DNA of 64,000 nt from Haliotis cracherodii. Lineage: Eukaryota. Every line of letters starts with the position of its first letter. Position 1 is the first letter of the stretch. Positions 1 to 51,296 of the stretch are shown in pieces. Location: assembly GCF_022045235.1 (NCBI RefSeq), contig NW_027266286.1:28830001-28894000 (forward strand), read 5' to 3'. The notes beneath the pieces were generated by a model. It was not told where the DNA came from, ran no database searches, and was given only the letters and a program-made list of their open reading frames with translations. Made by a program: the position numbers and the translations under genes.

Positions 1-1642
1 TCCGCCAAAAAGCCAGCACGGGTAGATAACTCCGTCAAACCTGGAGACTACAAATATATCATGGAGACATCGGCGTCAGACGTGTCGTCATCTCCATCAC
101 GCAAAGGTCTTCATGAATCTGTTGGAGCATCTGCTTCACCCTCTAGGAGCTCTCACAGCAGTCCTCGTGAATCTGACAGTGGATCTGACAAACCTGATGA
201 CAGATGCAACACTTCACCAACGGCATCTCCATTGCCACATCCAAGGTCTCTAACAGGGTCCAGCCAATCTGTCTTGTCGTCTGAAATTCTAAGCAGCGTC
301 TCCTCTGACTCTGAGAAAGTATTCGACCCCTTCGCAAAGGACCACCTTCAGCCCAGACTTTCCCCCAGGGAGCCATCTGTGGACGTTCATTTCCCAGTCG
401 CTGAAACAGTGTCCGAGATATCCCTGGCAAACAGGAGCGATGAATCGTGGTTTACCGACTCCAGGGAGTCGAACAGTTTCCACCAGGACGCACTACACAT
501 ACGTAAGCTGATGCTGGACCAGGCGTGGGTCTCTGACAGACATCAGCCGATGTCGGACTGGGTGTCCTCTGTTATCGTGTGGGATGATGACGGTAAGTGA
601 TGCCATCAGTAGTTGGAACATCATCAGAGAGTGAGTGAGTGAGTGTCGTTTAATATCAGAAATAGGCATCACACATTTTACCAACATTACATGATGAGCT
701 GAAACTTATATATGAATTATGACAGGTATATTCACATAAAAGTATTTTCTCTAAGTAGCTTTGTTATTATTTTTTTCATCTATGAAGCAAATTTGTTGTG
801 AAGTGACAGATATATATATGTATAAGATTCTTGTTTCTGTCTCAAAAGTTGCAAGCAACTTGGGTGTGGACTCTCTCCTGACCAGACTGAAGAACCGGTT
901 TCAGGTGAGTCCAGTGATGTCCGTGCTCTTGTCACTCAGCGACTCTCATTGCTTCAAGACATACAAGGCATCTTAAGGAAAAACGAAACAATTCTACGGA
1001 TCTATTATAGTGAACGCTCCAGTGAAGAATTTCATTTTTGAGGGGTAAAACTTGAAATTTCTATGCCTTTTCGCAAGACTCTGGGGAAACGTTTTTAGAA
1101 TACTCCCAGAAGAACCAATGGTCGGCCCCAACTAAGTGATATTTTCCTTGTTGTTTTCGTCATGATGATATCCGCTGAAATATCAACCTACTTTTCTTAC
1201 CAGAGCACGTGGTGGCGCCTGACAAGGGGGAGGGAGACTCGGGTCCAGATCCTCAAGAAATCCAGCTCAGCATCCGGAGGCTGCACCAGCGGTGAGTACA
1301 GAAGTATTTGTCGTGTTTGGTTAATGGTTTCACAAAGCAAAGAACGCCCTACTATTCTCTTTTACCGGAGAAAATTAAAATAATGGAGACCTGTCACCTC
1401 AGTAACATGTTCTTGCTGCAGCTTATTGTAGATCTCTTCAACTTGGTCTTGGTGGTACAACTGACATAACAGAAGCGAAACACCGTTACTGTCTTTGGTT
1501 GTCCGAGGTCCTTTGTCTGAAGCATTGTTTCCTGTTTGCAGGTGGAGACGTGGACAAGACACAACGCAGAGAGAAGCTGGAGAAGCGAGTGCAGAGGTTC
1601 ATGTCCCGGTTCTTCATTTGTGGAGGACCATCACAGGCCTAG
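1..1642 (+). CDS. Array gene copy 1 (5'-truncated), uncharacterised Ser-rich protein
   Basis: Exons <1-592, 849-904, 1204-1291, 1542-1642, with GT-AG introns of phase 1,0,1. The join reads ...WDDD-VASNLGVDSLLTRLKNRFQ-STWWRLTRGRETRVQILKKSSSASGGCTS-GGDVDKTQRREKLEKRVQRFMSRFFICGGPSQA*. Confidence 0.7.
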
Positions 1643-2490
1643 ACACAGTCTGTGTTAGGCCCAGACACAGTGCCAGTGTCTCTATCATGCCCAAACACAG
1701 TGCCGGTGTCTATGTCAGGCCCAGACACAGTGCAGGTGTCTCTGTCAGGCCCAGACACAGTGCAGGTGTCTATGTCAGGCCCAGACACAGTGCCAGTGTC
1801 TCTGTCAGGCCCAGACACAATGCAGGTGTCTATGTCAGGCCCAGACACAGTGCCGGTGTCTATGTCAGGCCCAGACACAATGCCGGTGTCTATGTCAGGC
1901 CCAGACACAGCGCCAGTGTCTCTGTCAGGCCCAGACACAGTGCAGGTGTCTATGTCAGGTCCAGACACAGTGCCGGTGTCTCTGTCAGGCCCAGACACAG
2001 TGCCGGTGTCTCTGTCAGGCCCAGACACAGTGCCGGTGTCTCTGTCAGGCCCAGACACAGTGCAGGTGTCTATGTCAGACCCAGACACAGTGCCAGTGTC
2101 TCTGTCAGGCCCAGACACAGTGCCGGTGTCTCTGTCAGGCCCAGACACAATGCAGGTGTCTATGTCAGGCCCAGACACAGTGCCGGTGTCTATGTCAGGC
2201 CCAGACACAGCGCCGGTGTCTATGTCAAGTCCAGACACAGTGCCAGTGTCTCTGTCAGGCCCAGACACAGTGCAGGTGTCTATGTCAGGTCCAGACACAG
2301 TGCCGGTGTCTCTGTTAGGCCCAGACACAGTGCCGGTGTCTATGTCAGACCCAGACACAGTGCCAGTGTCTCTGTCAGGCCCAGACACAGTGCCGGTGTC
2401 TATGTCAGGTCCAGACACAGTGCCAGTGTCTATGTCAGACCTAGACACAGAGCAGGTGTCTATGTCAGGCCAAGGTATTGTGTAGGCGTC
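1643..2490. repeat. 30-bp minisatellite, unit 1 (~28 repeats)
   Basis: Consensus TATGTCAGGCCCAGACACAGTGCCGGTGTC, visible as a two-per-line register. Confidence 0.97.
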
Positions 2491-2494
2491 ACTG

Positions 2495-3635
2495 TTAAAT
2501 GGGCGTGCCTTATCGTGTAGCCATATCCTGTGTATATTAAATGGGCGTGCTTAATAATGTAGCTACATCAAATGGCTATTTAATGGTCGTGTTTTATCAT
2601 GTAGCTACACACTGTGTATATTAAATGGGCGTGCCTTATCGTGTAGCTACATCCTGTGTATATTAAATGGGCGTGCCTTATCGTGTAGCTACATCCTGTG
2701 TATATTAAATGGGCGTGCCTTATCGTGTAGCTACATCCTGTGTATATTAAATGGGCGTGCCTTATCGTGTAGCTACATCCTGTGTAAGTTAATGGTCGCG
2801 CCTTGACATGTAGCCACATCCTGTGTATATTAATGGTCGTGCCTTATCATGTAGCTGTCGCTTGTGTTTATGAAATGTTATCTTGCAGCTGCATCCTGTG
2901 CCTTTTAAATGGGCGTGCCACATCATGTAGCTACATCCTGTGTATATTAAATGGGCGCGCCACATCATGTACTTACACACTGTGTATATTAAATGGGCGT
3001 GCCTTATCGTGTAGCTACATCCTGTGTGTATTAGATGGGAGTGCCTTATCATGTAACTACATCCTGTGTGTATTTATAGTCGTGTCATATCATGTAGCTA
3101 CATCCTGTGTATGTTAAATGGGCGTGCCTTATCCTGTAACTACATCCTGTGTATATTAAATGGGCGTGCCTTATCGTGTAGCTACACACTGTGTATATTA
3201 ATGGTCGTGTCTTATCATGTAGCTACATCCTGTGTATATTAAATGGTCGTGCCTTATCATGTAGCTACATCAAATGGTCATTTAATGGTCGTGCCTTATC
3301 ATGTGGCTACATCCTGTGTATATTAATGGTCGTGCCTTATCATGTAGCTACATCCTGTGTATATTAATGGTCGTGCCTTATCATGTGGCTACATCCTGTG
3401 TATATTAATGGTCGTGCCTTATCATGTAGCTACATCCGGTGTCTATTAAACGGTCGTGTCATATCATGTGGCTACATCCTGTGTATATTAATGGTCGTGC
3501 CTTTTCATGTAGCTGTAGCTGGTGTTTATCAAATGTTATCTTGTAGCTACATCCGATGCATGTTATTTGGGCGTGTCTCCTCATGTACCTACATCTCATG
3601 TATAGTTAATGGACGTCCGTCTTCATGTAGCCTGT
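2495..3635. repeat. 41/42-bp minisatellite, unit 1
   Basis: Consensus ATCCTGTGTATATTAAATGG(G/T)CGTGCCTTATC(A/G)TGTAGCTAC, containing the palindrome ATGTAGCTACAT. Confidence 0.95.
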
Positions 3636-4366
3636 GTATCGTGAATAGGGTAATCTATTTACCTTGAGGTAGTGTGCCTGATCCTGTTAATATCATATTA
3701 TCTGCTGTATTCTTAATGTATTACACATACATTAATTTGTTTTCTAAATGTACCTGTCACGTGGTTGCAAATGGTAATGAAGGGTCTGTTAAAAAGAGTT
3801 ATACAAAAACTTGATAATAATCAAAAGCGGAAAAAAAATAATTCATGGCTTTAAAAAAAAATCAAAATGAGTTTAAATGCTTATGAATATAAAACTGGAA
3901 AATATGAAAATATAGATAAAAAGAGGAATACAAAAGCTTCAAAACATAAATATACTGAAACAAGGGGGAAAAACTAATGCGTGGATAAAAAAATCAAATT
4001 GAGTTCAAATGCTTATAAAAATATAACTAAAATATGTGAAATTATTCATAAAAAACGCATCTTATTTATGAATAAAAAGACCAACAATATAGAATATATT
4101 GAAATATACCCTGAACGTATAGTAAGCATTTGGTCACCTAGACTTACTTGTAATCGGTTGTACACCCTATATGCATAGCTTAGAGTGATTTGTCTATCTT
4201 AGTTGTGGGAGAGATGTAATCCCAACAAAGTTAGTTGTAAGAGAGTTGTGAACCCTATATTTATAATTTGTTGTGAGAGACAATAAAAGTGCTAATGTAC
4301 AGACAGTGTTATTGTCTTAATTCTGTGATATTATTACACTGCAAGATTCGTTGTCTGCAGTACCAG

Positions 4367-4473
4367 GGCCGACTTGCACAAAGCGATCTTAGAACTAAGA
4401 TTATCATAACTCCCATTCTTTAACAGGGACTTACAATAGTCGTAGCCCTAAGATCGCTTTGTGCAAGTGGGCT
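4367..4473. mobile_element. ~107-bp MITE, possibly PIF/Harbinger-type, present in every unit
   Basis: TIRs GGCC(C/G)ACTTGCACAAAGCGATCTTAG ... CTAAGATCGCTTTGTGCAAGTGGGCT, flanked by CAG on both sides (candidate 3-bp TSD). Other copies: 12597-12693, 20480-20586, 29210-29245 (truncated), 37245-37344, 43960-44059, 50933-51039. Confidence 0.7.
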
Positions 4474-4591
4474 CAGACGTGACTATGAAGCAGGTGACAT
4501 TATTGTACACATCCGATGAGGGAGTTACACGTGTTTATTTGTTTTATGTTTGACGCCGCACTCAGCAATATTCCAGCTATATTCCAGCTAT

Positions 4592-5200
4592 GGGCCTGTG
4601 GGGGACCTGTCTGAAGGAGGCTGCAGGCCGCGGCTACACGTCGACGTTTTTGGCTACAAGGGAGTTCTGTACGATTCGGGCTGTATGGGGCTGGCGTTGT
4701 CGTGCTGATAAAGAACACCGCGTGGTAGCTGTTTTAGGAATGTTTGGACAATCGGACGCAGAATGTCATCCATGTAACGCCGTGCTGTCAAAGTTCCGTT
4801 AACGATGGCCAGTGGTGTTCTTTCCTGCCAGCAAATTCCTCCCCACATTGCATCCCCTCCACCATACTCCACCCTCTGACGACTATGTTGCTCTGTCAAT
4901 AACTGTCCTCTATAAGGACTGTAAGCCCTATATCCTTCAGATCCGAGTCGCCTGGTCACTGTCTGTTGACTTACCATACGCCCAAAGGTATTCGTCGCTG
5001 ATGACGTCACTGTCAAGAATCGATTCCAGAGATGCAAAGTACGCAAATACCGGTCTTCATTGGGCGTAGTTACTCTGTTGCCTGTCTGGTGTCTGTCCGG
5101 TCCATCTGTTGCGTTGCATCAGGTTAGTTACAGCAACACAGGAGCACCCCCAAAAGTTCTAGCAACGTAGGCCTTTGTGGCTCCCATCTGTACCATACTC
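4592..5200 (-). mobile_element. Tc1/mariner transposase remnant (unit 1)
   Basis: Minus-strand translation gives Tc1 motifs: HTH region (NRFLTVT..GRMVSQQTVTRRL), GGGDAMWGGI..RTPL.IVNGTLTARRYMDDILRP, and VLYQHDNA. An internal deletion removes the first catalytic Asp block; frameshifts and stops are present. Confidence 0.9.
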
Positions 5201-5201
5201 A

Positions 5202-5440
5202 GGGGACCCGTGAAGATCCGGGGTAGATTAGGTCTTTAGCAACCCGTGTTTGCTGCATAAGGCGATTATGCTTGTCGTAAGTGGCGACTAACGGGATCGG
5301 GTGGTCAGACTCGCTGACTTGGTTGATGCATGTCATTGTGTCTAAATTGCGTGGATCAATCTCTGGATTGTTTGGTCCAGACTCGATTATTTACAGACCG
5401 CCACACATATAAAGTGTGCTGTTAAACAACAAACAACAAC
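5202..5440 (+). mobile_element. SINE-like dispersed repeat abutting the Tc1 remnant (units 1-6)
   Basis: GACCCGTGAAGATCCGGGGTAGA...GCGACTAACGGGATCGGGTGGTCAG...GTTAAACAACAAAC tail. Other copies: 13433-13700, 21326-21593, 29984-30251, 38084-38351, 44799-45022. Independent diverged fragments outside the array show it is dispersed. Confidence 0.8.
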
Positions 5441-6128
5441 GACATACTAAGAGCCCTTCTCGCGTTGTTTGGGTCTGTTTACTTGAGCGCATGAATTGAA
5501 TGGAAATTAATGGTTAATACTTGTGAGTGAGAGAGTTACAACGGCAATGTATCAGCCATATGGGGATGAGAACAAATAAAACACTGCGCAGTAAAGAAAC
5601 AGGGTAAATATCACAGATTTGATATAAAACAAACCAGATTGATTAAAGTTAAAAATTATATAGATAAATAGATGAAACAGTTATTTTCGACACATGTTCA
5701 CAATCTATGATACAGACCAATACATGGTCATTTTTTTCCAGTATCGTCAGTGTCAATGATCGGAGTTTATGTTATTCCTTTTACTCCGACCGAACTTCAT
5801 GCAAATATAACGAAGACACCAACTTTCTTATTTACAAGCTCCACACACCCCTTACACATCGTTCTCTTGTTCCTAATATACCGGGAGGAAACGAAGGTGG
5901 CACGCGCTGAACTGGAGTTTGCTTGTTTTAATGTCGAACGAAGGGAGATAACTCTAATGGAACACGTTTTTCAAACATTTAGTTAAACACCAACAGAAGA
6001 TGACAGGGGGTCATTGATATTATCAATCAAAGGAACGTTGATCATGAACATCCAACAGCCATAAAAAATAAATTAGTATCAACATTGAAAACACCTTATT
6101 GTCAATTTTCATCTCTCATATGTTACAA

Positions 6129-6278
6129 TGACGTCATAGTATCCTGACGTCACAGGTCAAAGTTCATCACTTCGTAGTATTGTTCTGCGAGACCACTGGC
6201 ACAAAGGCAGCTCTCGTGTTTTAAGAAGTTTAATCAGTATATTACACCCCGTAGAGATCGGACACCTTCCAGGTAAGT
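6129..6278 (+). promoter_or_regulatory. Candidate promoter of array gene: two CRE palindromes, a DR1 element, and a non-coding first-exon donor
   Basis: TGACGTCA at 6129-6136 and 6145-6152; AGGTCA-A-AGTTCA at 6154-6166; CAG|GTAAGT at 6272/6273. Repeated at ~14451 (second CRE is TGACGTCT), 22345, 31002, 39102 and 45773. Confidence 0.5.
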
Positions 6279-7321: not shown

Positions 7322-8300
7322 ATGTCCTCTGTCGAACTTGCTGAAAGACAGAAGGGCGAAGATGCAGTAATTAATTCCGAGGACTACCGTTACATCATGT
7401 CAACATCGGCGTTTGACTTAAGTTCCTCTCCATCGTCATCCAAGACTAGTCCTCGGAGACCTGAAGCTTCCGCCAAAAAGCCAATACGGGTAGATAACTC
7501 CACCAAACATGGAGACTACAAATATATCATGGAGACATCGGCGTTAGACGTGTCGTCATCTCCATCACGCAAAGGTCTTCGTGAATCTGTTGGAGCATCT
7601 GCTTCACCCTCTAGGCGCTCTCACAGCAGTCCTCGTGAATCTGAAAGTCGATCTGATAAACCTGATGACAGGTGCTACACTTCACCAACGGCATCTCCAT
7701 TGCCACAACCAAGGTCTCTTACAGGGTCCAGCCAATCTGTCTTGTCGTCTGAAATTCTAAGCAGCGTCTCCTCTGACTCGGAGAAAGTATTCGACCCCTT
7801 CGCAAAGGACCACCTTCAGCCCAGACATTCCCCCAGGGAGCCATCTGTCGACGTTCATTTCCCAGTCGCTGAAACAGTGTCCGAGATATCCCTGGCAAAC
7901 AGGAGCGACGAATCGTGGTTTACTGACTCCAGGGAGTCGAACAGTTTCCACCAGGACGCACTACACATACGTAAGCTGATGCTGGACCAGGCGTGGGTCT
8001 CTGACAGACAGCAGCCGATGTCGGACTGGGTGTCCTCCGTTATCGTGTGGGATGATGACGGTAAGATATGCCATCAGTAGTTGGAACACCATCAGAGTAG
8101 TATAAAAAAAGAGTGAGTGAGTGAGTGAGTGAGTGAGTGTCGTTTTTAACAATATTCCTGCTACTTCACATCGTACCAACATAACATGATGAGCTGAAAC
8201 ATATATGAATTATGACAGGTGTATTTACATAAAAGTATTTTCTCTAAGTATTTTTGCTAAAAAAAATTCTATGAAGCAAATTTGCTGATAACGAAGTGAC

Positions 8301-8336
<36 letters not shown>

Positions 8337-9160
8337 TTCTTGTTTCTGTCTCAAAAGTTGCAAGCAACTTGGGTGTGGACTCTCTCCTGACCAGACTGAA
8401 GAACAGATTTCAGGTGAGTCCAGTGATATCCGTGCTCTTATCACTCAGCGACTCTCATTGCTTCAAGACATACAAGACTTCTTAAGGAAAAACGAAACAA
8501 TTCTAGGGATCCATTATAGTGAACGCTCAAGTGAAGAATTTCATTTTTGAGGGGTAAAACCCGAAACTTAATTATTTTTTTTGCCTTTTTCCAAGACTGG
8601 GGAAACGGTTTTTAGAATACTCCCAGAAGAACCAATGGTCGGCCCCAACTAAATGATATTTTCCTTGTTGTTTTCGTCATGATGATATCCGCTGAAATAT
8701 CAACCTACTTTTCTTACCAGAGCACGTGGTGGCGCCTGACAAGGGGGAGGGAGACTCGGGTCCAGATCCTCAAGAAATCCAGCACAGCCTCCGGAGGCGG
8801 CACCAGCGGTGAGTACAGGAGTATTTGTCGTGTTTGGTTAATGGTTTCACAAAGCAAAGAACGCCCTACTATTCTCTTTTACCGGAGAGAAATTAAAATA
8901 ATGGAGACCTGTCACCTCAGTAACATGTTCTTGCTGCAGCTTTTTGTAGATCTCTTCAACTTGGTCTGGATGGTAAAATTGACATAACAGAAGCGAAACA
9001 CTGTTACTGTCTTTGGTTGTCCGAGGTCCTTTGTCTGAAGCATTGTTTCCTGTTTGCAGGTGGAGACGAGGACAAGACACAACGCAGAGAGAAGCTGCAG
9101 AAGCGAGTGCAGAGGTTCATGTCCCGGTTCTTCATTTGTGGAGGACCATCACAGGCCTAG
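7322..9160 (+). CDS. Array gene copy 2, 327-aa uncharacterised Ser-rich protein
   Basis: ATG 7322 (ACAATGT) follows acceptor AACAG|7300. Exons 7322-8060, 8358-8413, 8721-8808, 9060-9160 total 984 nt with no internal stop. Synonymous differences among copies (TCT/TCG, GTG/GTC, GCA/GCG, CGG/AGA/AGG) support the frame. Confidence 0.75.
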
Positions 9161-10020
9161 ACACAGTCTGTGTTAGGCCAAGACACAGTGCCGGTGTCTA
9201 TGTTAGGCCCAGGCACAGTGCAGGTGACTATGTCAGGCCAAGACACAGTGCCGGTGTCTATGTTAGGCCCAGGCACAGTGCCGGTGTCTATGTCAGGCCA
9301 AGACACAGTGTCGGTGTCTATGTTAGGCCCAGACACAGTGCCAGTGTCTCTGTCAGGCCCAGACACAGAACAGGTATCTATGTCAGGCTCAGACACAGTG
9401 CAGGTGACTATGTCAGGCCCAGACACAGTGCAGGTGTCTATGTCAGGTCCAGACACAATGCAGGTGTCTATGTCAGGTCCAGACACAGAGCAGGTATCTA
9501 TGTCAGGCCCAGACACAGTGCAGGTGTCTATGCTAGACACAGTGCAGGTGTCTATGCCAGACACAGTGCCAGTGTCTCTGTCAGGCCCAGACACAGAGCA
9601 GGTATCTATGTCAGGCCCAGACACAGTGCAGGTGTCTATGTCAGGCCCAGACACAGTGCAGGTGTCTATGTCAGGTCCAGACACAATGCCGGTATCTATG
9701 TCAGGCCCAGACACAGTGCAGGTGTCTATGCCAGACACAGTGCAGGTGTCTATGTCAGGTCCAGACACAATGCCGGTGTCTATGTCAGGTCCAGACACAA
9801 TGCCGGTGTCTATGTCAGGTCCAGACATAGTGCCGGTGTCTCTGTCAGGCCCAGACACAGTGCCGGTGTCTCTATCAGGCCAAGACACAGTGCAGGTGTC
9901 TCTGTCAGGCCCAGACACAGTGCCGGTGTCTCTGTCAGACCCAGACACAGTGCCGGTGTCTCTGTCAGGCCAAGACACAGTGCAGGTGTCTATGTCAGGC
10001 CAAGGTATTGTGCAGGCGTC
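9161..10020. repeat. 30-bp minisatellite, unit 2 (~29 repeats, three shortened to 24 bp)
   Basis: Same consensus; 6-nt deletions near 9530, 9555 and 9730. Confidence 0.95.
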
Positions 10021-10024
10021 ACTG

Positions 10025-11670
10025 TTAAATGGTCGTGCTTTATCATTTAGCTGTATCCTGTGTATATTAAATGGCCGTGCCTTATCATGTAGCTACATCC
10101 TGTGTATGTTTAATGGGCGTGCCTTATCATGTAGCTACATCCTGTGTATATTAAATGGTCGTGCCTTATCATGTAGCTACATCCTGTGTATGTTAAATGG
10201 GCGTGCCTTATCATGTAGCTATATCCTGTGTATATTAAATGGTCGTGCTTTATCATGTAGCTACATCCTGTGTATATTAAATGGGCGTGCCTTATCATGC
10301 AGCTACATCCTGTGTATATTAAATGGTCGTGCCTTATCATGTAGCTACATCCTGTGTATGTTAAATGGGCGTGCCATATCATGTAGCTACATCCCGTGTA
10401 TATAAAATGGTCGTGCCCAATCATGTATCTATATATTGTGTATATCAAATGGGCTTGCTTTATCGTGTAGCTACGTCCAGTGTATATTACATGGGCGTGC
10501 CTTATCATGTAGCTGTATCCCGTGTATATGAAATGGTCGTGCCTTATCATGTAGCTACATCCTGTGTATAAAAATTGGTCTTGCGTTATGACGTAGCTAC
10601 ACACTGTGTATATAAAGTGGTCGTGCTTTATATTTTAGCTACATCAAATGGTGATTTAATGGTCATGTTTTATCATGTAGCTACACACTGTGTTTATTAA
10701 GTGGTCGTGCTTTATAATGTAGCTACATCAAATGGTTATTTAATATTTTATCATGTAGCTACACACTGTGAATATGACTTGGTCGTGCTTTATAATGTAG
10801 CTACACACTGTGTATATTAAATGGTCGTGCTTTATAATGTAGCTACATCAAATGGTTATTTAATGGTCGTGCCTTATTATGTAGCTACATCCTGTGTTTA
10901 TTAAATGGTCGTGCCTTATCGTGTAGCTACACTCTGTCTATATCAATGGTCGTGCCTTATCATGTAGCTTCACTCTGTCTATATTAATGGTCGTGCCTTA
11001 TCGTGTAGCTAAATCCTGTGTATATTAAATGGTCGTGCCTTATCATGTAGCTAAATCCTGTGTATATTAAATGGTCGTGCCTTATCATGTAGCTTCACTC
11101 TGTCTATATTAATGGTCGTGCCTTATCATGTAGCTTCACTCTGTCTATATTAATGGTCGTGCCTTATCGTGTAGCTACACACTGTGTATATTAAATGGTC
11201 GTACCTTATCATGTAGCTACATCCAGTGTATATTAGATGGGCGTGCTTTATCGTGTAGCTACATCCTGTGTGTATTTATGGTCGTGTCATATCATGTAGC
11301 TACATCCTGTGTCTATTAAATGTTCGTGCCTTATCATGTAGCTACATCCTGTGTCTATTAATGGTCGTGCCTTATCATGTAGCTACATCCTGTGTCTATT
11401 AAATGGTCGTGTCATATCATGTAGCTACATCCTGTGTATATTAATGGTCGTGCCTTATCATGTAGCTACATCCGGTGTCTATTAAATGGTCGTGCCTTAT
11501 CATGTAGCTACACCCTGTGTATATTAATGGTCGTGCCTTATCATGTAGCTGTAGCTGGTGTTTATCAAATGTTATCTTGTAGCTACATCCGATGCATGTT
11601 ATTTGGGCGTGTCTCCTCATGTACCTACATCTCATGTATATTTAGTGGACGTCCGTCTTCATGTAACCTG
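10025..11670. repeat. 41/42-bp minisatellite, unit 2
   Basis: Same consensus with variant units. Confidence 0.95.
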
Positions 11671-15654: not shown

Positions 15655-17401
15655 ATGTCCTCTGTCGAACTTTCTGAAAGACAGAAGGGCGAAGATGCAG
15701 TAATTTATTCCGAGGACTACCGTTACATCATGTCAACATCGGCATCTGACTTAAGTTCCTCTCCATCGTCATCCAAGACTAGTCCTCGGAGACCCGAAGC
15801 TTCCGCCAAAAAGCCAGCAGGGGTAGATAACTCCATCAAACCTGGAGACTACAAATATATCATGGAGACATCGGCGTCAGACGTGTCGTCATCTCCATCA
15901 TGCAAGATTCTTCGTGAATCTGTTGGAGCATCTGCTTCACCCTCTAGGAGCTCTCACAGCAGTCCTCGTGAATCTGACAGTGGATCTGACAAACCTGATG
16001 ACAGATGCTACACTTCACCAACGTCATCTCCATTGCCACACCCAAGGTCTCTTACAGGGTCCAGCCAATCTGTCTTGTCGTCTGAAATTCTAAGCAGCGT
16101 CTCCTCTGACTCGGAGAAAGTATTCGACCCCTTCGCAAAGGACCACCTTCAGCCCAGACTTTCCCCCAGGGAGCCATCTGTCGACGTTCATTTCCCAGTC
16201 GCTGAAACAGTGTCCGAGGTATCCCTGGCAAACAGGAGCGATGAATCGTGGTTTACCGACTCCAGGGAGTCGAACAGTTTCCACCAGGACGCACTACACA
16301 TACGTAAGCTGATGCTGGACCAGGCGTGGGTCTCTGACAGACAGCAGCCGATGTCGGACTGGGTGTCCTCTGTTATCGTGTGGGATGATGACGGTAAGAT
16401 ATGCCATCAGTAGTTGGAACATCATCAGAGTAGTATCAAAAGAGAATGAGTGAGTGAGTGAGTGAGTGTTGTTTTTAACAATATTCCTGCTACTTCACAT
16501 CGTACCAACATAACATGATGAGCTGAAACATATATGAATTATGACAGGTGTATTTACATAAAATTTACATATATATATATATATAAGATTGTTGTTTCTG
16601 TCTCAAAAGTTGCAAGCAACTTGGGTGTGGACTCTCTCCTGACCAGACTGAAGAACAGATTTCAGGTGAGTCCAGTGATATCCGTGCTCTTATCACTCAG
16701 CGACTCTCATTGCTTCAAGACATACAATACATCTTACTTAAGGAAAAACCAAACAATTCTAGGGATCCATTATAGTGAACGCTCAAGTGAAGAATTTCAT
16801 TTTTGAGGGGTAAAACTTGAAACTTAATTATTTTTATGCCTTTTTCCAAGACTGGGGAAACGTTTTTAGAATACTCCCAGAAGAACCAATGGTCGGCCCC
16901 AACTAAGTGATATTTTCCTTGTTGTTTTCGTCATGATGATATCCGCTGAAATATCAACCTACTTTTCTTACCAGAGCACGTGGTGGCGCCTGACAAGGGG
17001 GAGGGAGACTCGGGTCCAGATCCTCAAGAAATACAGCTCAGCATCCGGAGGCGGCACCAGCGGTGAGTACAGGAGCATTTGTCGTGGTTTCACAAAACAA
17101 AGAACTCCCTACTATTCTCTTTTACCGGAGAAATTAAAATAATGGAGACCTGTCACCTCAGTAACATGTTCTTGCTGCAGCTTGTTGTAGATCTCTTCAA
17201 CTTGGTCTGGATGGTAAAATTGACATAACAGAAGCGAAACACTGTTACTGTCTTTGGTTGTCCGAGGTCCTTTGTCTGAAGTATTGTTTCCTGTCTGCAG
17301 GTGGAGACGGGGACAAGACACAACGCAGAGAGAAGCTGCAGAAGCGAGTGCAGAGGTTCATGTCCCGGTTCTTCATTTGTGGAGGACCATCACAGGCCTA
17401 G
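15655..17401 (+). CDS. Array gene copy 3, 327 aa
   Basis: Exons 15655-16393, 16610-16665, 16975-17062, 17301-17401; splice sites intact and frame open. Confidence 0.75.
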
Positions 17402-32205: not shown

Positions 32206-33954
32206 ATGTCCTCTGTCGAACTTTCTGAAAGACAGAAGGGCGAAGATGCAGTAATTAATTCCGAGGACTACAGTTACATCATGTCAACATCGGCATCTGA
32301 CTTAAGTTCCTCTCCATCGTCATCCAAGACTAGTCCTCGGAGACCCGAAGCTTCCGCCAAAAAGCCAGCAGGGGTAGATAACTCCATCAAACCTGGAGAC
32401 TACAAATATATCATGGAGACATCGGCGTCAGACGTGTCGTCATCTCCATCATGCAAGATTCTTCGTGAATCTGTTGGAGCATCTGCTTCACCCTCTAGGA
32501 GCTCTCACAGCAGTCCTCGTGAATCTGACAGTGGATCTGACAAACCTGATGACAGATGCTACACTTCACCAACGTCATCTCCATTGCCACACCCAAGGTC
32601 TCTTACAGGGTCCAGCCAATCTGTCTTGTCGTCTGAAATTCTAAGCAGCGTCTCCTCTGACTCGGAGAAAGTATTCGACCCCTTCGCGAAGGACCACCTT
32701 CAGCCCAGACTTTCCCCCAGGGAGCCATCTGTCGACGTTCATTTCCCAGTCGCTGAAACAGTGTCCGAGGTATCCCTGGCAAACAGGAGCGATGAATCGT
32801 GGTTTACCGACTCCAGGGAGTCGAACAGTTTCCACCAGGACGCACTACACATACGTAAGCTGATGCTGGACCAGGCGTGGGTCTCTGACAGACAGCAGCC
32901 GATGTCGGACTGGGTGTCCTCTGTTATCGTGTGGGATGATGACGGTAAGATATGCCATCAGTAGTTGGAACATCATCAGAGTAGTATCAAAAGAGAATGA
33001 GTGAGTGAGTGAGTGAGTGAGTGTTGTTTTTAACAATATTCCTGCTACTTCACATCGTACCAACATAACATGATGAGCTGAAACATATATGAATTATGAC
33101 AGGTGTATTTACATAAAATTTACATATATATATATATAAGATTCTTGTTTCTGTCTCAAAAGTTGCAAGCAACTTGGGTGTGGACTCTCTCCTGACCAGA
33201 CTGAAGAACAGATTTCAGGTGAGTCCAGTGATATCCGTGCTCTTATCACTCAGCGACTCTCATTGCTTCAAGACATACAATACATCTTACTTAAGGAAAA
33301 ACCAAACAATTCTAGGGATCCATTATAGTGAACGCTCAAGTGAAGAATTTCATTTTTGAGGGGTATAACTTGAAACTTAATTATTTTTATGCCTTTTTCC
33401 AAGACTGGGGAAACGTTTTTAGAATACTCCCAGAAGAACCAATGGTCGGCCCCAACTAAGTGATATTTTCCTTGTTGTTTTCGTCATGATGATATCCGCT
33501 GAAATATCAACCTACTTTTCTTACCAGAGCACGTGGTGGCGCCTGACACGGGGGAGGGAGACTCGGGTCCAGATCCCCAAGAAATACAGCTCAGCATCCG
33601 GAGGCGGCACCAGCGGTGAGTACAGGAGCATTTGTCGTGGTTTCACAAAGCAAAGAACGCCCTACTATTCTCTTTTACCGGAGAAATTAAAATAATGGAG
33701 ACCTGTCACCTCAGTAACATGTTCTTGCTGCAGCTTGTTGTAGATCTCTTCAACTTGGTCTGGATGGTAAAATTGACATAACAGAAGCGAAACACTGTTA
33801 CTGTCTTTGGTTGTCCGAGGTCCTTTGTCTGAAGTATTGTTTCCTGTCTGCAGGTGGAGACGAGGACAAGACACAACGCAGAGAGAAGCTGCAGAAGCGA
33901 GTGCAGAGGTTCATGTCCCGGTTCTTCATTTGTGGAGGACCATCACAGGCCTAG
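32206..33954 (+). CDS. Array gene copy 5, 327 aa
   Basis: Exons 32206-32944, 33163-33218, 33528-33615, 33854-33954; open frame, nearly identical to copy 3. Confidence 0.75.
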
Positions 33955-40276: not shown

Positions 40277-41235
40277 ATGTCCTCTGTCGAACTTGCTGAA
40301 AGACAGAAGGGCAAAGATGCAGTAATTAATTCCGAGGACTACCGTTACATCATGTCAACATCGGCATCTGACTTAAGTTCCTCTCCATCGTCATCCAAGA
40401 CTAGTCCTCGGAGACCTGAAGCTTCCACCAAAAAGCCAGTACGGGTAGATAACTCCATCAAACCTGGAGACTACAAATATATCATGGAGACATCGGCGTC
40501 AGACGTGTCATCATCTCCATCACGCAAAGGTCTTCATGAATCTGTTGGAGCATCTGCTTCACCCTCTAGGAGCTCTCACGGCAGTCCTCGTGAATCTGAC
40601 AGTGGATCTGACAAACCTGATGACAGATGCTACACTTCACCAACGTCATCTCCATTGCCACACCCAAGGTCTCTTACAGGGTCCAGCCAATCTGTCTTGT
40701 CGTCTGAAATTCTAAGCAGCGTCTCCTCTGACTCTGAGAAAGTATTCGACCCCTTCGCAAAGGACCACCTTCAGCCCAGACTTTCCCCCAGGGAGCCATC
40801 TGTCGACGTTCATTTCCCAGTCGCTGAAACAGTGTCCGAGATATCCCTGGCAAATAGGAGCGATGAATCGTGGTTTACCGACTCCAGAGAGTCGAACAGT
40901 TTCCACCAGGACGCACTACACATACGTAAGCTGATGCTGGACCAGGCGTGGGTCTCTGACAGACAGCAGCCGATGTCGGACTGGGTGTCCTCTGTTATCG
41001 TGTGGGATGATGACGGTAAGTGATTCCATCAGTAGTTGGAACATCATCGAAAGTGAGTGAGTGAGTGTCGTTTAATATCAAAAATAGGCATCACACATTG
41101 TACCAACATTACATGATAAGCTGAAACATATATATGAATTATGACAGGTATATTCACATAAAAGTATTTTCTCTAAGTAGCTTTGCTATCATTTTTTTCT
41201 TCTATGATGCAAATTTGTTGATAAGGAAGTGACAG

Positions 41236-41272
<37 letters not shown>

Positions 41273-42104
41273 AGATTCTTGTTTCTGTCTCAAAAGTTGC
41301 AAGCAACTTGGGTGTGGACTCTCTCCTGACCAGACTGAGGAACAGGTTTCAGGTGAGTCCAGTGATGTCCGTGCTCTTGTCACACAGCGACTCTCATTGC
41401 TTCAAGACATACAAGACATCTTTCTTAACGACAAACGGAACAACTCTAGGGGTCAATTATTATAGTGAACGCTCAAGTGAAGAATTTCATTTTTGAGGGG
41501 TATAACTTGAAACTTAATTATTTTTATGCCTTTTCCCAAGACTCTGGGGAAAAGTTTTTAGAATACTCCCAGAAGAACCAATGGTCGGCCCCAACTAAGT
41601 GATATTTTCCTTGTTGTTTTCGTCATGATGATATCCGCTGAAATATCAACCTACTTTTCTTACCAGAGCACGTGGTGGCGCCTGACAAGGGGGAGGGCGA
41701 CTCGGGTCCAGATCCTCAAGAAATCCAGCTCAGTATCCGGAGGCGGCACCAGCGGTGAGTACAGGAGTATTTGTCGTGTTTGGTTAATGGTTTCACAAAG
41801 CAAAGAACGCCCTACTATTCTCTTTTGCCGGAGAAATTAAAATAATGGAGACCTGTCACCTCAGTAACATGTTCTTGCTGCACCTTGTTGTAGATCTCTT
41901 CAACTTGGTCTTGGTGGTAAAACTGACAAAACAGAAGCGAAACACTGTTACTGTCTTTGGTTGTCCGAGGTCCTTTGTCTGAAGTATTGTTTCCTGTCTG
42001 CAGGTGGAGACGAGGACAAGACACAACGCAGAGAGAAGCTGCAGAAGCGAGTGCAGAGGTTCATGTCCCGGTTCTTCATTTGTGGAGGACCATCACAGGC
42101 CTAG
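40277..42104 (+). CDS. Array gene copy 6, 327 aa
   Basis: Exons 40277-41015, 41297-41352, 41667-41754, 42004-42104; open frame. Confidence 0.75.
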
Positions 42105-42292
42105 ACACAGTCTGTGTTAGGCCCAGACACAGTGCCGGTGTCTCTGTCAGGCCCAGACACAGTGCAGGTGTCTCTATCAGGCCCAGACACGGAGCAGGTG
42201 TCTATGTTAGGCCCAGACACAGTGCAGGTGTCTATGTTAGGCTCAGACACAGAGCCGGTGTCTATGTCAGGACCAGGCAAAGCGCAGGTGTC
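42105..42292. repeat. 30-bp minisatellite, unit 6 (~6 repeats)
   Basis: Same consensus, short array. Confidence 0.93.
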
Positions 42293-46915: not shown

Positions 46916-48739
46916 ATGTCCTCTGTCGAACTTGCTGAAAGAAAGAAGGGCAAAGATGCAGTAATTAATTCCGAGGACTACAGTTACACCATGTCAACAT
47001 CGGCATCTGACTTAAGTTCCTCTCCATCGTCGTCATCCAAGACTAGTCCTCGGAGACCTGAAGCTTCCGCCAAAAAGCCAGTATGGGTAGATAACTCCAT
47101 CAAACCTGGAGACTACAAATATATCATGGAGACATCGGCGTCAGACGTGTCGTCATCTCCATCACGCAAAGGTCTTCGTGAATCTGTTGGAGCATCTGCT
47201 TCGCTCTCTGGGAGCAGTCCTCGTGAATCTGAAAGTCGATCTGACAAACAAGATGACAGTTGCTACACTTCACCAACGTCATCTCCATTGCCACACCCAA
47301 GGTCTCTTACAGGGTCCAGCCAATCTGTCTTGTCGTCTGAAATTCTAAGCAGCGTCTCCTCTGACTCGGAGAAAGTATTCGACCCCTTCGCGAAGGACCA
47401 CCTTCAGCCCAGACTTTCCCCCAGGGAGCCATCTGTCGACGTTCATTTCCCAGTCGCTGAAACAGTGTCCGAGATATCCCTGGCAAACAGGAGCGATGAA
47501 TCGTGGTTTACCGACTCCAGGGAGTCGAACAGTTTTCACCAGGACGCACTACACATACGTAAGCTGATGCTGGACCAGGCGTGGGTCTCTGACAGACAGC
47601 AGCCGATGTCGGACTGGGTGTCCTCTGTTATCGTCTGGGATGATGACGGTAAGAGATTCCACCAGTAGTTGGAACATCATCAGAGATGTCAAAAGTGAGT
47701 GAGTGAGTGAGTGAGTGAGTGAGTGAGTGACTGTCGTTTTTAACAATATTCCTGCTACTTCACATTGTACCAACACAACATGATGAGCTGAAACATATAT
47801 GAATTATGACAGGTGTATTTACATAAAAGTATTTTCTCTAAGTAGTTTTGCAATTATTATTTTTCCTATGAAGCAAATTTGCTGATAACGAAGTGACAGA
47901 TATATATATATATAAGATTCTTGTTTCTGTCTCAAAAGTTGCAAGCAACTTGGGTGTGGACTCTCTCCTGACCAGACTGAGGAACCGGTTTCAGGTGAGT
48001 CCAGTGATGTCCGTGCTCTTATCACACAGCGACTCTCATTGCTTCAAGACATACAAGGCATCTTAAGGAAAAACGAAACAATTCTACGGATCCATTATAG
48101 TGAACGCTCAAGTGAAGAATTTCATTTTTGAGGGGTAAAACCCGAAACTTAATTATTTTTTTGCCTTTTTCCAAGACTGGGGAAACGTTTTTAGAATACT
48201 CCCAGAAGAACCAATGGTCGGCCCCAACTAAGTGATATTTTCCTTGTTGTTTTCGTCATGATGATATCCGCTGAAATATCAATCTACTTTTCTTACCAGA
48301 GCACGTGGTGGCGCCTGACAAGGGGGAGGGCGACTCGGGTCCAGATCCTCAAGAAATCCAGCTCAGCATCCGGAGGCTGCACCAGCGGTGAGTACAGGAG
48401 TATTTGTCGTGTTTGGTTAATGGTTTCACAAAGCAAAGAACGCCCTACTATTCTCTTTTGCCGGAGAGAAATCAAAATAATGGAGACCTGTCACCTCAGT
48501 AACATGTTCTTGCTGCACCTTGTTGTAGATTTCTTCAACTTGGTCTGGATGGTAAAATTGACATAACAGAAGCGAAACACTGTTACTGTCTTTGGTTGTC
48601 CGAGGTCCTTTGTCTGAAGTGTTGTTTCCTGTCTGCAGGTGGAGACGAGGACAAGACACAACGCAGAGAAAAGCGACAGAAGCGAGTGCAGAGGTTCATG
48701 TCCCGGTTCTTCATTTGTGGAGGACCATCACAGGCCTAG
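46916..48739 (+). CDS. Array gene copy 7, 325 aa
   Basis: Exons 46916-47648, 47939-47994, 48300-48387, 48639-48739. It carries +3 and -9 nt indels in exon 1, both frame-preserving. Confidence 0.75.
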
Positions 48740-49005
48740 ACACAGTCTGTGTTAGACCCAGACACAGTGCCGGTGTCTATGTCAGGCCCAGACACAGTGC
48801 CGGTGTCTCTGTCAGGCCCAGACACAGTACCAGTGTCTCTGTCAGGCCCAGACACAGTGCCGGTGTATATATCAGGCCCAGACACAGTGCAGGTGTCTAT
48901 GTCAGGCCCAGACACAGTGCAGGTGTCTATGTCAGGCCCAGACACAATGCAGGTATCTATGTCAGGCCAAGACAGTGCCGATGACTACAGGCACAGCGCA
49001 AGTGT
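48740..49005. repeat. 30-bp minisatellite, unit 7 (~8 repeats)
   Basis: Same consensus, short array. Confidence 0.93.
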
Positions 49006-49009
49006 CATT

Positions 49010-50038
49010 GTTAAATGGGTGTGTCTTATCATGTGCCTGCATCCTGTGTATATTAAATGGTCGTGCCTTATCATGTAGCTGCATCCTGTGTATATTAATG
49101 GTCGTGCCTTATCATGTCGCTGCATCCTGTGTATATTAAATGGGCGTGCCTTAACATGTAGCTACATCCTGTGTATATTCAATGGACGTGCCTTATCGTG
49201 TAGCTACATCCTGTGTATATTCAATGGACGTGCCTTATCGTGTAGCTACATCCTGTGTATATTAAATGGTCGTGCCTTATCATGTAGCTGCACACTGTGT
49301 ATATTAATGGTCGTGTCTTATCATGTAACTGCACACTGTGTATATTAATGGTCGTGTCTTATCATGTAACTGCACACTGTGTATATTAAATGGTCGTGCC
49401 TTATCATGTAGCTGCATTCTGTGTATATTAAATGGTCGTGCCTTATCATGTAACTGCACACTGTGTATATTAATGGTCGTGCGTTATCATGTCGCTGCAT
49501 CCTGTGTATATTAAATGGTCGTGCCTTATCATGTAGCTACATCCTGTGTATGTGAAATGGACGTGCCTTATCATGTAGCTACATCCTGTGTATGTTAAAT
49601 GGGCGTGCCTTATCATGAAGCTACATCCTGTGTATATTTAATGGGCGTGCTTTATCATGTAGCTACATCCTGTGTATGTTAAATGGGCGTGCCATATCAT
49701 GTAGCTACATCCTGTGTATATTAAATGGGCGTGCTTTATCATGTAGCTACATCCTGTGTGTATAAAACGGGCGTGGCTTATCATGTAGCTACATCCTGTG
49801 TATATTAAATGGTCGTGCCTTATCATGTAGCTACATCAAATGGTTATTTAATGGTCGTGCCTTATCATGTAGCTACATCCGGTGTCTATTAATGGTCGTG
49901 CCTTATCATGTAGCTGTAGCTGGTGTTTGTCAAACGTTATCTTGTAGCTACATCCGATGCATGTTATTTGGGCGTGTCTCCTCATGTACCTACATCTCAT
50001 GTATATTTAGTGGACGTCCGTCTTCATGTAGCCTGTGT
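49010..50038. repeat. 41/42-bp minisatellite, unit 7
   Basis: Same consensus. Confidence 0.95.
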
Positions 50039-51296
50039 ATCGTGAATAGGGTAATCTATTTACCTTGAGGTTGTGTGCCTGATCCTGTAAATATCATATT
50101 ACCTGCTTTGTTCTGAATGTATTACACATACATTTATTTGTTTTCCAAATGTACCTGTCACGTGGTTGCAAATGGTAATGAAGGGTCTGTTAAAAAGAGT
50201 TATACAAAAACTTAACAATAATAAAAAGAGAAAAAAAATTAATTCATGGGTTTAAAAAAAATCAATTGATTTTAAATGCTTATAAATATAAAACTGAAAA
50301 ATGTGAAAATATAGATTAAAAAGCTTCAAAAGAAACAAGGGGAAAAACGTAAATCGTTGATAAAAAAATCCAATTGAGTTGAAATGCTTATGAAAATATA
50401 ACTAAAATATCTGATATGATTAATAAAAAAACATCTTATTTATGAATAAAAAGACCAACAATATAGAATATAGTGAAATATATCCTGAACGTATACTAAG
50501 CATAGGGTCACCTAAACTTACTTGTAATCGGTTGTACACCCTATATGCATAGCTTAGAGTGATTTGTCCACCTTAGTTGTGTGAGAGATGTAATCCCAAC
50601 ATAATAAGTTGTAAGAGAGTTGTGAAACCTATATTTATAATTTGTTGTGAGAGACATGTTCAACTCGGTTGTGAGAGAGTTGTCTATCTTAGCTGTGAGA
50701 GCGTTGTGCACCGTGGATGATCATACTGTGAAGTAGTTATACATCTATAATAGTTGTTAAAGAAAAAAGGAAACTTGGTCTAACTTTAAAGGTATTCGGC
50801 CACAATCTTTCTTAAGTTCCCGATTGTCAACACAAAATTCAATATGCAATAAAAGTGCTGATGGGCAGACAGTGTTATTGTCTTAATTCTGTGATATTAT
50901 TACGCTGCAAGATTCGTTGTCTGCAGTACCAGGGCCCACTTGCACAAAGCGATCTTAGAACTAAGATGATCATAACTCCTATACTTTAACATAGGCTTAC
51001 AATAGTCGTAGCCCTAAGATCGCTTGGTGCAAGTGGGCTCAGACCCTGTGGGAAGTGAAGCACCTCAGTACAACGCGTGACTACGAAGCAGGTGATTGTA
51101 CACATCCGATGAGGGGGTTCCACGTCTTTGTTTGTTAGTTGTTTGACGCCGCACTCAGCAATATTCCAGCTATATATGGAGTAATTGACCGTACTTGAAG
51201 TTCAATGAATAGTCAACAAATTACTAGTTTACTGAAACACTCAGTTTTCAGTTATCAATTAAAAAAAACAGTCGTGTTGGAAATACTCACTTGGCA

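What the first reader, a model, noticed from the sequence alone, without database searches (positions are those of the whole stretch)
1..51173. Ampliconic array of an unrecognised spliced gene hidden among satellites
Seen: at least 7 tandem units, each with four exons that join into one 325-327-aa frame through splice sites preserved in every copy. Indels fall in introns and spacers, or are multiples of 3 in exons. The protein has a Ser/Pro-rich, probably disordered N-terminal two thirds, a Trp-rich middle (SWFTD, QAWVSD, SDWVSS, VWDDD, STWWR) and a basic C-terminus. I recognise no domain. Inference: a lineage-restricted gene under recent copy-number expansion, organised like gene-bearing macrosatellites such as D4Z4/DUX4. 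Germline, immune or shell roles are only guesses.
Basis: partly seen in the sequence, partly recalled or inferred. Interest (0 to 1): 0.82.

Follow-up and report, generated by a model that had tools for sequence, protein, structure and literature searches.

The report
Abalone-only gene in seven tandem copies
This stretch of black abalone DNA holds seven head-to-tail copies of a real, spliced and expressed gene found only in abalones; it encodes a floppy serine-rich protein of unknown role, is already listed in public annotation as "uncharacterized protein", and is an ordinary tandem gene cluster, not a new kind of element.

Summary
The array has exactly seven units of 6.6-8.6 kb, at window 1-51175, and starts about 2.7 kb before the window. 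Each unit carries a four-exon, GT-AG coding sequence of 325-327 aa. Copy c4 has a premature TAG at codon 199.

- **Expression:** contigs of three RNA-like runs lack the introns. One 471-nt contig joins exons 1-2-3-4 exactly at the predicted junctions. A DNA-like run keeps the introns.
- **Selection:** exons carry only 3n indels. The C-terminal half is under purifying selection (dN/dS 0.23; p = 4e-6). The Ser-rich N-terminal half drifts among copies.
- **Relatives:** a profile search of 1.84 billion proteins finds only Haliotis proteins (H. rufescens at least 5 loci, H. rubra, H. asinina, H. cracherodii), all annotated "uncharacterized". Pfam, PDB and the Atlas give nothing. AlphaFold gives pLDDT 37.
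- **Other loci:** the genome also has one intact dispersed paralogue and one remnant.
- **Flanks:** all three loci are followed by the same 30-bp and 42-bp minisatellites, probably inside a long 3'UTR.

The gene is therefore not "unrecognised". The expansion is only partly recent: copies differ by 1.6-6.9 %. The D4Z4 analogy is loose. The scan had only first-reader notes on this window before. Function is unknown; my best guess is a phospho-regulated disordered adaptor.

The parts
1..1642 (+). Copy c1 coding region. Exon 1 is cut by the window start (ATG 147 nt upstream). Exons 1-592, 849-904, 1204-1291, 1542-1642.
7322..9160 (+). Copy c2 CDS, 327 aa, intact. Exons 7322-8060, 8358-8413, 8721-8808, 9060-9160.
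   Evidence: The spliced RNA contig and the joint 8413^8721 are.
15655..17401 (+). Copy c3 CDS, 327 aa, intact. Exons 15655-16393, 16610-16665, 16975-17062, 17301-17401.
23550..25365 (+). Copy c4 CDS with a premature TAG at codon 199 (Trp>stop). Exons 23550-24288, 24561-24616, 24926-25013, 25265-25365.
32206..33954 (+). Copy c5 CDS, 327 aa, intact. Exons 32206-32944, 33163-33218, 33528-33615, 33854-33954.
40277..42104 (+). Copy c6 CDS, 327 aa, intact. Exons 40277-41015, 41297-41352, 41667-41754, 42004-42104.
46916..48739 (+). Copy c7 CDS, 325 aa, intact. Exons 46916-47648, 47939-47994, 48300-48387, 48639-48739. Its exon 1 + exon 4 equal the annotated H. cracherodii protein XP_071114667.1.
9152..10001 (+). 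30-bp minisatellite after c2. It begins inside the last 9 nt of the CDS and holds no poly(A) hexamer. The same arrays lie at 1648-2471, 17407-18020, 25371-26044, 33960-34783, 42110-42292 and 48745-48974 (6-28 units).
   Evidence: An RNA contig runs 40 nt into it.
10025..11550 (+). 42-bp minisatellite after c2; each unit holds the 12-bp palindrome ATGTAGCTACAT, and many units hold ATTAAA (8-22 hexamers per array). The same arrays lie at 2495-3514, 18045-19433, 26069-28279, 34808-36197, 42297-42908 and 49011-49915 (15-54 units).
3520..4287 (+). A-rich spacer after the minisatellites, ending in a conserved AATAAA (4282-4287). It is expressed in the RNA-like runs. It is the probable end of the 3'UTR of the upstream copy. 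The same AATAAA lies at 12508, 20391, 29121, 37156, 43871 and 50848.
4283..5414 (.). Highly repeated SINE-like element (about 4283-4582) and a Tc1/mariner transposase remnant (ORF 4654-5046, minus strand). They are present in every unit. Both ends of the array map to this point of the unit.
50847..51175 (+). Right end of the array, matching unit positions 4281-4582 of c2. It is followed by an inverted copy of unit positions 5000-5402 at 51351-51778.

Best explanation
This is a tandem cluster of seven copies of a protein-coding gene restricted to the genus Haliotis, in the black abalone (H. cracherodii, chromosome record C23: 28.827-28.881 Mb).

**Unit layout.** Each 6.6-8.6 kb unit is one transcription unit, in this order:
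- SINE/Tc1 debris and the promoter region;
- four coding exons;
- a stop codon that lies in the first unit of a 30-bp minisatellite;
- a 42-bp minisatellite;
- an A-rich spacer ending in a conserved AATAAA.

**What is shown.**
- The gene is transcribed and spliced exactly as predicted.
- The acidic, Trp-rich core (about residues 130-246) and the basic C-terminal tail are under purifying selection and are conserved across four Haliotis species.
- The Ser-rich N-terminal part is built from DYxYIM...SSS modules. It evolves freely and changes its module number.

**What is inferred.**
- The cluster grew by unequal crossing-over of the whole unit and was later patched by gene conversion.
- The differences in unit length come from minisatellite copy number.
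- The 3'UTR runs 1.8-3.8 kb through both minisatellites.

**Protein.** It has no signal peptide, no membrane segment and no predicted fold. My low-confidence guess (about 0.25) is that it acts inside the cell as a phosphorylation-regulated, disordered adaptor. It would work through short linear motifs (DYxYI, DPF, Trp-acidic) and a basic amphipathic C-terminal helix. Extra copies would simply raise the dose.
For: **Structure**
- Seven co-linear exon sets, all introns GT-AG, one frame of 325-327 aa.

**Expression**
- In runs X1, X2 and X5 (three studies, two organism labels) exon bins have depth 20-220 and intron bins about 0-3.
- X2 contig 22 (471 nt) lies on 7880-8059, 8718-8807 and 9059-9165. 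The 54 letters between the first two pieces fit exon 2. The total of 431 nt is what the three predicted junctions give.
- The joint 8413^8721 (GT..AG) appears in X1, X2 and X5 but not in X10.
- X10 covers the introns evenly, and one of its contigs spans intron 3 (8752-9074).

**Selection**
- Exon indels are only 3 and 9 nt; introns have 25 indel events.
- dN/dS among copies is 0.52 overall, 1.04 for codons 1-150 and 0.23 for codons 151-327.
- In the C half, 15 of 36 unique variants are nonsynonymous against 77 % expected, p = 4e-6.
- Against the intact paralogue dN/dS is 0.28 at dS 0.13.
- The core is the least diverged part of the unit, 1.4-2.0 %.
- H. rubra and H. asinina proteins keep the core and the tail.

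**Restriction**
- hmmsearch of 1.84 billion representatives gives only two Haliotis clusters.
- Pfam, PDB and the Atlas give nothing.
- AlphaFold gives mean pLDDT 37.

**Cluster history**
- Pairwise distance between units is 1.6-6.9 %, and the nearest neighbour changes along the unit.
- Both ends of the array map to unit positions 4582/4600.

**Transcription unit**
- The minisatellites occur only at family loci and a few degenerate sites.
- There is no poly(A) hexamer in any 30-bp array.
- The AATAAA is conserved in all seven units.
- The spacer 3520-4282 is expressed.
Against: - No protein-level evidence (no proteomics or Ribo-seq).
- The runs are labelled RNA only by guess, although their intron-free coverage behaves like RNA.
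- Contigs give no strand, no start and no end. The transcription start, the poly(A) site and the continuity of the 3'UTR through the minisatellites are therefore inferred. The expressed spacer could be a separate transcript.
- Among the array copies the N-terminal half shows no constraint (dN/dS about 1), and one copy is broken.
- The functional guess rests only on composition and on motifs I recognised from memory.
- Disordered proteins lose detectable similarity quickly, so 'genus-restricted' may be a failure to detect homology.
Confidence: 0.85

Rival explanations
1. It is a true gene-bearing macrosatellite of the D4Z4/RS447/CT47 kind: a hypervariable, recently amplified, largely silenced array whose copy number itself is the functional variable.
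For: - The units are several kb long and head to tail, each with a complete gene and embedded shorter repeats. The layout resembles RNU2 or the TAF11-like array as described in PMC5687341.
- c3, c4 and c5 are young copies.
Against: - There are only seven units, and they differ by 1.6-6.9 %.
- H. rufescens proteins are as far from these copies as the copies are from each other.
- The gene has introns and is transcribed in three studies.
- No data on copy-number polymorphism or chromatin are available.
Confidence: 0.08
2. It is a transcribed but untranslated array: decaying pseudogenes or a long non-coding RNA locus whose open frame survives only because the copies are young.
For: - c4 carries a stop codon.
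- The N-terminal half has dN/dS about 1 among copies.
- Exon and intron 2/3 divergence are similar, about 3 %.
Against: - The C half has dN/dS 0.23, p = 4e-6.
- Exons have only 3n indels.
- The paralogue is intact at dS 0.13 with dN/dS 0.28.
- The core and the C-terminus are conserved in H. rubra and H. asinina.
Confidence: 0.05
3. It is an ORF that belongs to a transposable element or a satellite, or it is an assembly artefact.
For: Each unit contains SINE and Tc1 debris and two minisatellites.
Against: - The genome has only three loci, all on one chromosome record.
- No transposable-element domain is present in the protein.
- The Tc1 remnant lies on the other strand, outside the gene.
- The copies differ in sequence and in minisatellite length, so they are not collapsed or duplicated haplotigs.
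- An independent H. rufescens assembly also has at least 5 loci.
Confidence: 0.02

Closest known systems
Human gene-bearing macrosatellites (D4Z4/DUX4, RS447/USP17, TAF11-like, CT47; review PMC5687341)
   Same: The units are several kb long and head to tail. Each carries a whole gene plus transposon debris. As in RNU2, a shorter tandem repeat is embedded in every unit.
   Different: There are seven units, against tens to 150 in the human arrays. The units are 1.6-6.9 % diverged and mosaic. The gene has three introns, whereas D4Z4 carries an ORF within each unit. The gene is expressed in ordinary RNA runs. Copy-number polymorphism and heterochromatin state are unknown.
Ordinary tandemly arrayed gene clusters made by unequal crossing-over (for example yeast CUP1 arrays, PMC4232551)
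   Same: Whole transcription units are repeated. The array ends at the same point of the unit on both sides. Gene conversion has patched the copies. The likely effect is on dose.
   Different: The gene is a genus-restricted orphan without a known function. Each unit carries two family-specific minisatellites.
Taxonomically restricted (orphan) genes that encode disordered proteins
   Same: No homologue is found outside one genus. The protein has low complexity and low pLDDT. Its N-terminus evolves fast and its internal modules expand.
   Different: Here a core of about 120 aa and the C-terminal tail are clearly constrained across four species. The gene is therefore an established gene, not a newborn one.
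'Mirage' minisatellites that copy exon ends
   Same: The 30-bp array starts inside the last 9 nt of the coding sequence. The stop codon TAG sits where the repeat consensus has CAG.
   Different: The array is anchored at the stop codon and 3'UTR boundary and not at a splice junction. I did not read the primary literature on mirages.
'Platelet binding protein GspB-like', the name NCBI gives the H. asinina member (XP_067676225.1)
   Same: Only the serine-rich repeats.
   Different: No Pfam or PDB match to any adhesin. No signal peptide and no anchor. The name is a low-complexity artefact.

Membership tests
Gene-bearing macrosatellite (D4Z4/RS447/CT47 kind) | Head-to-tail repeat units of several kb | tested here: met
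   Stop-to-stop unit lengths are 7518, 8241, 7964, 8589, 8150 and 6635 nt. The definition is taken from PMC5687341.
Gene-bearing macrosatellite (D4Z4/RS447/CT47 kind) | Each unit holds a complete ORF or gene | tested here: met
   Seven four-exon genes, six of them intact.
Gene-bearing macrosatellite (D4Z4/RS447/CT47 kind) | Many nearly identical units (strong homogenisation) | tested here: not met
   Seven units with pairwise distance 1.6-6.9 %.
Gene-bearing macrosatellite (D4Z4/RS447/CT47 kind) | Copy number highly polymorphic between individuals, with heterochromatic marks | not testable with these tools
   No population long reads or chromatin data were available.
Taxonomically restricted gene family (Haliotis) | No detectable homologue outside the lineage | tested here: met
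   hmmsearch of 1.84 billion representatives found only P0002 and P0005, both Haliotis. The word search found 4 proteins, all Haliotis. Caveat: fast-evolving disordered sequence may escape detection.
Taxonomically restricted gene family (Haliotis) | Transcribed and correctly spliced | tested here: met
   an intron-free contig and the joint 8413^8721 in three runs of three studies.
Taxonomically restricted gene family (Haliotis) | Coding constraint | tested here: met
   dN/dS is 0.23 in the C half (p = 4e-6) and 0.28 against the paralogue. Exons carry only 3n indels.
Transposable-element ORF | Dispersed multi-copy distribution and transposable-element protein domains | tested here: not met
   Three loci on one chromosome record. 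No Pfam domain.
BNIP3 family (considered because of an 'SDWVS' word recalled from memory) | Match to the BNIP3 Pfam domain and a C-terminal transmembrane helix | tested here: not met
   No Pfam match for exon 1 even at E up to 10, or for the full-length relatives at E up to 0.01. The highest 19-residue hydropathy is 0.71, so there is no membrane segment.

The most novel reading that the evidence does not exclude
The two family-specific minisatellites, with periods of 30 and 42 nt (both multiples of 3), may be functional parts of the mRNA.

- **RNA element.** The 30-bp array would be a variable string of 6-28 GUGUCU/AGACAC hairpins in the 3'UTR. It could set the stability, localisation or translation of each copy's message.
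- **Readthrough.** The reading frame stays open for 112-414 codons past the single TAG in all seven copies. Stop-codon readthrough would add a (SMSGPDTVPV)n tail.

My tests gave no coding signature in the repeats, but they do not exclude the RNA-element reading.
Probability: 0.07. Interest if true: 0.6.

Novelty: new member of a known kind. Interest (0 to 1): 0.3.

Why it matters
- **Annotation.** In the H. cracherodii annotation I found only one model on this array, and it skips exons 2-3. The H. asinina member carries a misleading adhesin name. The full four-exon model is backed here by RNA contigs.
- **Material for study.** The family is a clean example of an orphan gene with a constrained core, a free-running repeat-module N-terminus and private minisatellites at its 3' end. 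It could serve studies of how young gene families expand in molluscs and of whether 3'UTR VNTRs affect expression.
- **Limits.** It opens no long-standing question and is not a new kind of genetic element.

Tried and rejected
**Searches that found nothing**
- Pfam on exon 1, exon 3 and exon 4, and on the full-length relatives: no domain.
- ESM Atlas, whole protein and residues 140-327: no usable hit.
- PDB profile search: none.
- AlphaFold2 on a three-sequence alignment: pLDDT 37. I therefore ran no fold search, since it would be meaningless.
- Rfam on the whole window: none.
- The LOC identifiers and 'Haliotis orphan genes tandem' in the paper library: nothing relevant.

I could not fetch H. 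rufescens or H. rubra DNA, so there is no orthologue dN/dS, no synteny and no copy number in the other species.
- The promoter scan is a bacterial consensus and says nothing here.

**Ideas tested and dropped**
- Coding signature in the 30-bp array. Two of the three plus-strand frames are open in every array. The most variable unit positions are nonsynonymous in the CDS frame. This gives no support for a translated VNTR.
- RNA fold of the 42-bp array: z = +0.1, no structure.
- The BNIP3 idea, recalled from memory: rejected (see the membership test).

- I sent no self-joined spliced protein to any search tool. Searches went exon by exon by reference, or used full-length proteins that the tools returned. 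The joined frame was checked only in local scripts.


Full report
**Organism and place.** The window is G000:C23:28830001-28894000. The contig length, 76,751,615 bp, equals that of the record that encodes XP_071114667.1 of Haliotis cracherodii. That protein is letter for letter exon 1 plus exon 4 of copy c7. The genome is therefore the black abalone, which agrees with earlier notes of this scan that call it an abalone.

**The observation.**
- Tandem Repeats Finder shows a recurring pair of minisatellites, 30 bp then 42 bp, seven times.
- BLAST of the four c2 exons finds seven co-linear sets.
- c1 starts 147 nt before the window, and its exon 1 is complete in the genome.
- c4 has TGG>TAG at codon 199.
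- Stop-to-stop unit lengths are 7518, 8241, 7964, 8589, 8150 and 6635 nt. The differences come mainly from the minisatellites: 6-28 units of 30 bp and 15-54 units of 42 bp.
- Unit-like sequence starts about 2.7 kb upstream of the window, at c2-equivalent position 4600, and ends at 51175, at c2-equivalent position 4582. The array is thus a whole number of units, bounded in the SINE/Tc1 debris.

**Is it expressed and spliced?** One read-laying run on 3520-9165 used three runs labelled 'RNA?' (X1, X2, X5; three studies, two organism labels) and one unlabelled run (X10).
- In X1, X2 and X5 exon bins have depth 20-220 and intron bins about 0-3.
- In X10 exons and introns are covered alike (18-69), and one contig spans intron 3 (8752-9074). 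X10 therefore behaves as DNA and the other three as RNA.
- X2 contig 22 (471 nt) lies on 7880-8059, 8718-8807 and 9059-9165. Adjacent pieces abut in the record, and 54 letters between the first two pieces fit exon 2. The 431 nt laid equal the length the predicted junctions 8060^8358, 8413^8721 and 8808^9060 require.
- The joint 8413^8721 is listed for X1, X2 and X5 and not for X10.
- This contig also runs 40 nt past 9165, into the 30-bp array.
- The refutation criterion 'no spliced transcripts' therefore fails. Contigs cannot give strand, ends or expression level.

**Is it coding?**
- Among the seven copies, exons have two indel events (3 and 9 nt). Introns have 25, of which 7 are multiples of three.
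- Pooled Nei-Gojobori dN/dS is 0.52: 1.04 for codons 1-150 and 0.23 for codons 151-327.
- I counted each variant once against the majority codon. The C half has 21 synonymous and 15 nonsynonymous changes where 77 % nonsynonymous is expected (binomial p = 4e-6). The N half has 13 and 39, which is exactly neutral.
- The least diverged 200 nt of the whole unit is the exon 1 core, 7807-8006, at 1.4-2.0 %.
- Raw exon divergence (about 3 %) is no lower than that of introns 2 and 3. The signal lies in the kind of change and not in its amount.

**Family and relatives.**
- The word search with exon 1 found four proteins, all Haliotis.
- A profile of three full-length relatives, searched by HMMER against 1.84 billion representatives, found only two clusters, both Haliotis.
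- The cluster look-up gives five H. rufescens loci (LOC124112385, LOC125373240, LOC124112933, LOC124112476, LOC125373238), one H. rubra locus, one H. asinina locus (misnamed 'platelet binding protein GspB-like') and the H. cracherodii model.
- The alignment of eight proteins shows three parts:
  - a variable N-terminus built from DYxYIM-TSASD-SSS modules (2 in the array copies, 7 in H. asinina);
  - a strongly conserved core, SEILSSVSSDSE.VFDPF..DHLQ...ESWFT..RESNSF...RKL.LD.AWV...MSDWVSSV.VW.DD;
  - a conserved basic tail, EKLQKR.Q.F.SR.F.CGG.S.A.
- Two annotated models (H. cracherodii c7 and H. asinina) skip exons 2-3. This keeps the frame (56 + 88 = 144 nt). It may be a real isoform; I did not test this.

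**Other loci in this genome.**
- A six-frame profile search and DNA searches find one intact paralogue about 690 kb downstream. It is L002, with exons 4714-6232, 6556-6611, 6998-7085 and 7263-7363, all GT-AG, 587 aa, and six near-identical 44-aa DYKYIM modules.
- They also find a remnant of exons 3-4 with a frameshift at C23:9.5176 Mb.
- dN/dS between the array copies and the paralogue is 0.28 at dS 0.13.
- Both extra loci are followed by the same two minisatellites. Outside these loci the minisatellites occur only at a few degenerate sites. The link between gene and minisatellites is therefore older than the array.

**The transcription unit (inferred).**
- The 30-bp array begins at 9152, inside the last 9 nt of the CDS.
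- No 30-bp array holds AATAAA or ATTAAA.
- The first ATTAAA lies in the first 42-bp units.
- An AATAAA followed by the same 10 nt is conserved 1.8-3.8 kb after each of the seven stop codons.
- The spacer just before it (3520-4282) is expressed at exon-like depth in the RNA runs. In the DNA run its depth is like that of the exons, so it is not a genome-wide repeat.
- Unit c2 has lost about 190 nt at 4282 that the other units keep. This explains why the contigs break there.
- c7 keeps this downstream region, and c1 has none upstream of it. This fits a 3'UTR and does not fit a 5' exon.
- I therefore read the mRNA as a short 5'UTR, 984 nt of CDS and a long 3'UTR with both VNTRs. A separate transcript from the spacer is not excluded.
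- RNA coverage starts near 7300 in X2 and X5. One X1 contig runs unspliced from 6836. The transcription start is not settled.

**History of the cluster.**
- Pairwise distance over 3.5 kb of unit is 1.6-2.4 % within c3/c4/c5 and 4.2-6.9 % for the other pairs. The nearest neighbour changes along the unit (for example c5-c6 at 0.2 % in one 500-nt block and c3-c5 at 0.2 % in another). This indicates gene conversion or unequal exchange.
- In a protein tree the H. rufescens proteins do not separate from the H. cracherodii copies. Only c3/c4/c5 group together.
- The cluster is thus about as old as the split between these two species, with one younger burst. It is not a fresh amplification.

**The protein.**
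- It is 327 aa, 19.6 % Ser, with GRAVY -0.85 and no hydrophobic segment.
- It has a neutral-to-basic Ser-rich N part, an acidic Trp-rich core and a very basic tail.
- AlphaFold2 gives pLDDT 37 throughout, with helix tendency at 208-226, 245-273 and 301-318.
- Pfam, PDB and the Atlas give nothing.
- From my own knowledge of motif classes, DYxYI, DPF and Trp-acidic words resemble short linear motifs used by adaptors. That is a lead and not a result.

**Comparison with known kinds.** By the definition in PMC5687341 the unit size qualifies as a macrosatellite, and gene-bearing examples exist (D4Z4/DUX4, RS447/USP17, TAF11-like, CT47, RNU2 with an embedded microsatellite). The low copy number, the 2-7 % divergence, the introns and the ordinary expression place this locus with common tandem gene clusters. 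Earlier notes of this scan report other, larger gene arrays in this genome, so such arrays are not rare here.

**Limits.**
- Only the one read-laying run returned contigs only.
- I sent no self-joined spliced model to any search tool.

**Verdict.** The locus is a real, expressed, constrained, genus-restricted gene in a seven-copy tandem cluster. It is already annotated as uncharacterized and its function is unknown. It is ordinary in kind, with a modestly interesting private pair of 3' minisatellites.

Noticed in passing
window 9152-9200 (and the same place in every copy): The 30-bp minisatellite starts inside the last three codons of the CDS. The stop codon TAG sits where the repeat consensus has CAG. 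The CDS frame then stays open for 112-414 codons past the stop in all seven copies. The variable positions of the repeat unit are nonsynonymous in that frame, so I see no coding signature.
   Followed up: partly
window 1648-2471 and the other 30-bp arrays: Each 30-bp unit holds the inverted repeat GTGTCT...AGACAC. As RNA, eight units fold better than shuffles (z = -3.3). The 42-bp array does not (z = +0.1), although each of its units holds the 12-bp palindrome ATGTAGCTACAT.
   Followed up: partly
L002 4714-6232 (G000:C23:29582714-29584232): Exon 1 of the dispersed paralogue has six near-identical 132-nt (44-aa) DYKYIM modules. The H. rufescens counterpart (455 aa) has fewer, and H. asinina has seven more diverged ones. 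This is a coding repeat that changes in number between close species.
   Followed up: partly
L003 6578-6977 (G000:C23:9517578-9517977) and C23:9.518-9.525 Mb: A remnant of exons 3-4 of the same family, with a frameshift. It is followed by about 7 kb of diverged 42-bp and 30-bp minisatellites (73-76 % identity). It is an old, dead family locus.
   Followed up: partly
window 4283-4582, 5221-5409, 6544-6732: Three short segments have enormous depth in all four runs (up to 10^5-10^6). Thousands of contigs join 4582 to about 5402 on opposite strands. These are very abundant SINE- or MITE-like repeats, one of them interrupted by a Tc1 remnant. Both ends of the array fall at this junction.
   Followed up: no
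window 62291-63718 (+): A 475-aa open frame rich in Ser, Pro and Gln with no Pfam match. It is probably a large exon of the neighbouring gene downstream of the array.
   Followed up: no
window 8100-8147 and 8293-8341 (intron 1): (GAGT)n and (TA)n microsatellites make intron 1 the most variable part of the gene: 216-297 nt long, 9.5 % mean distance.
   Followed up: no
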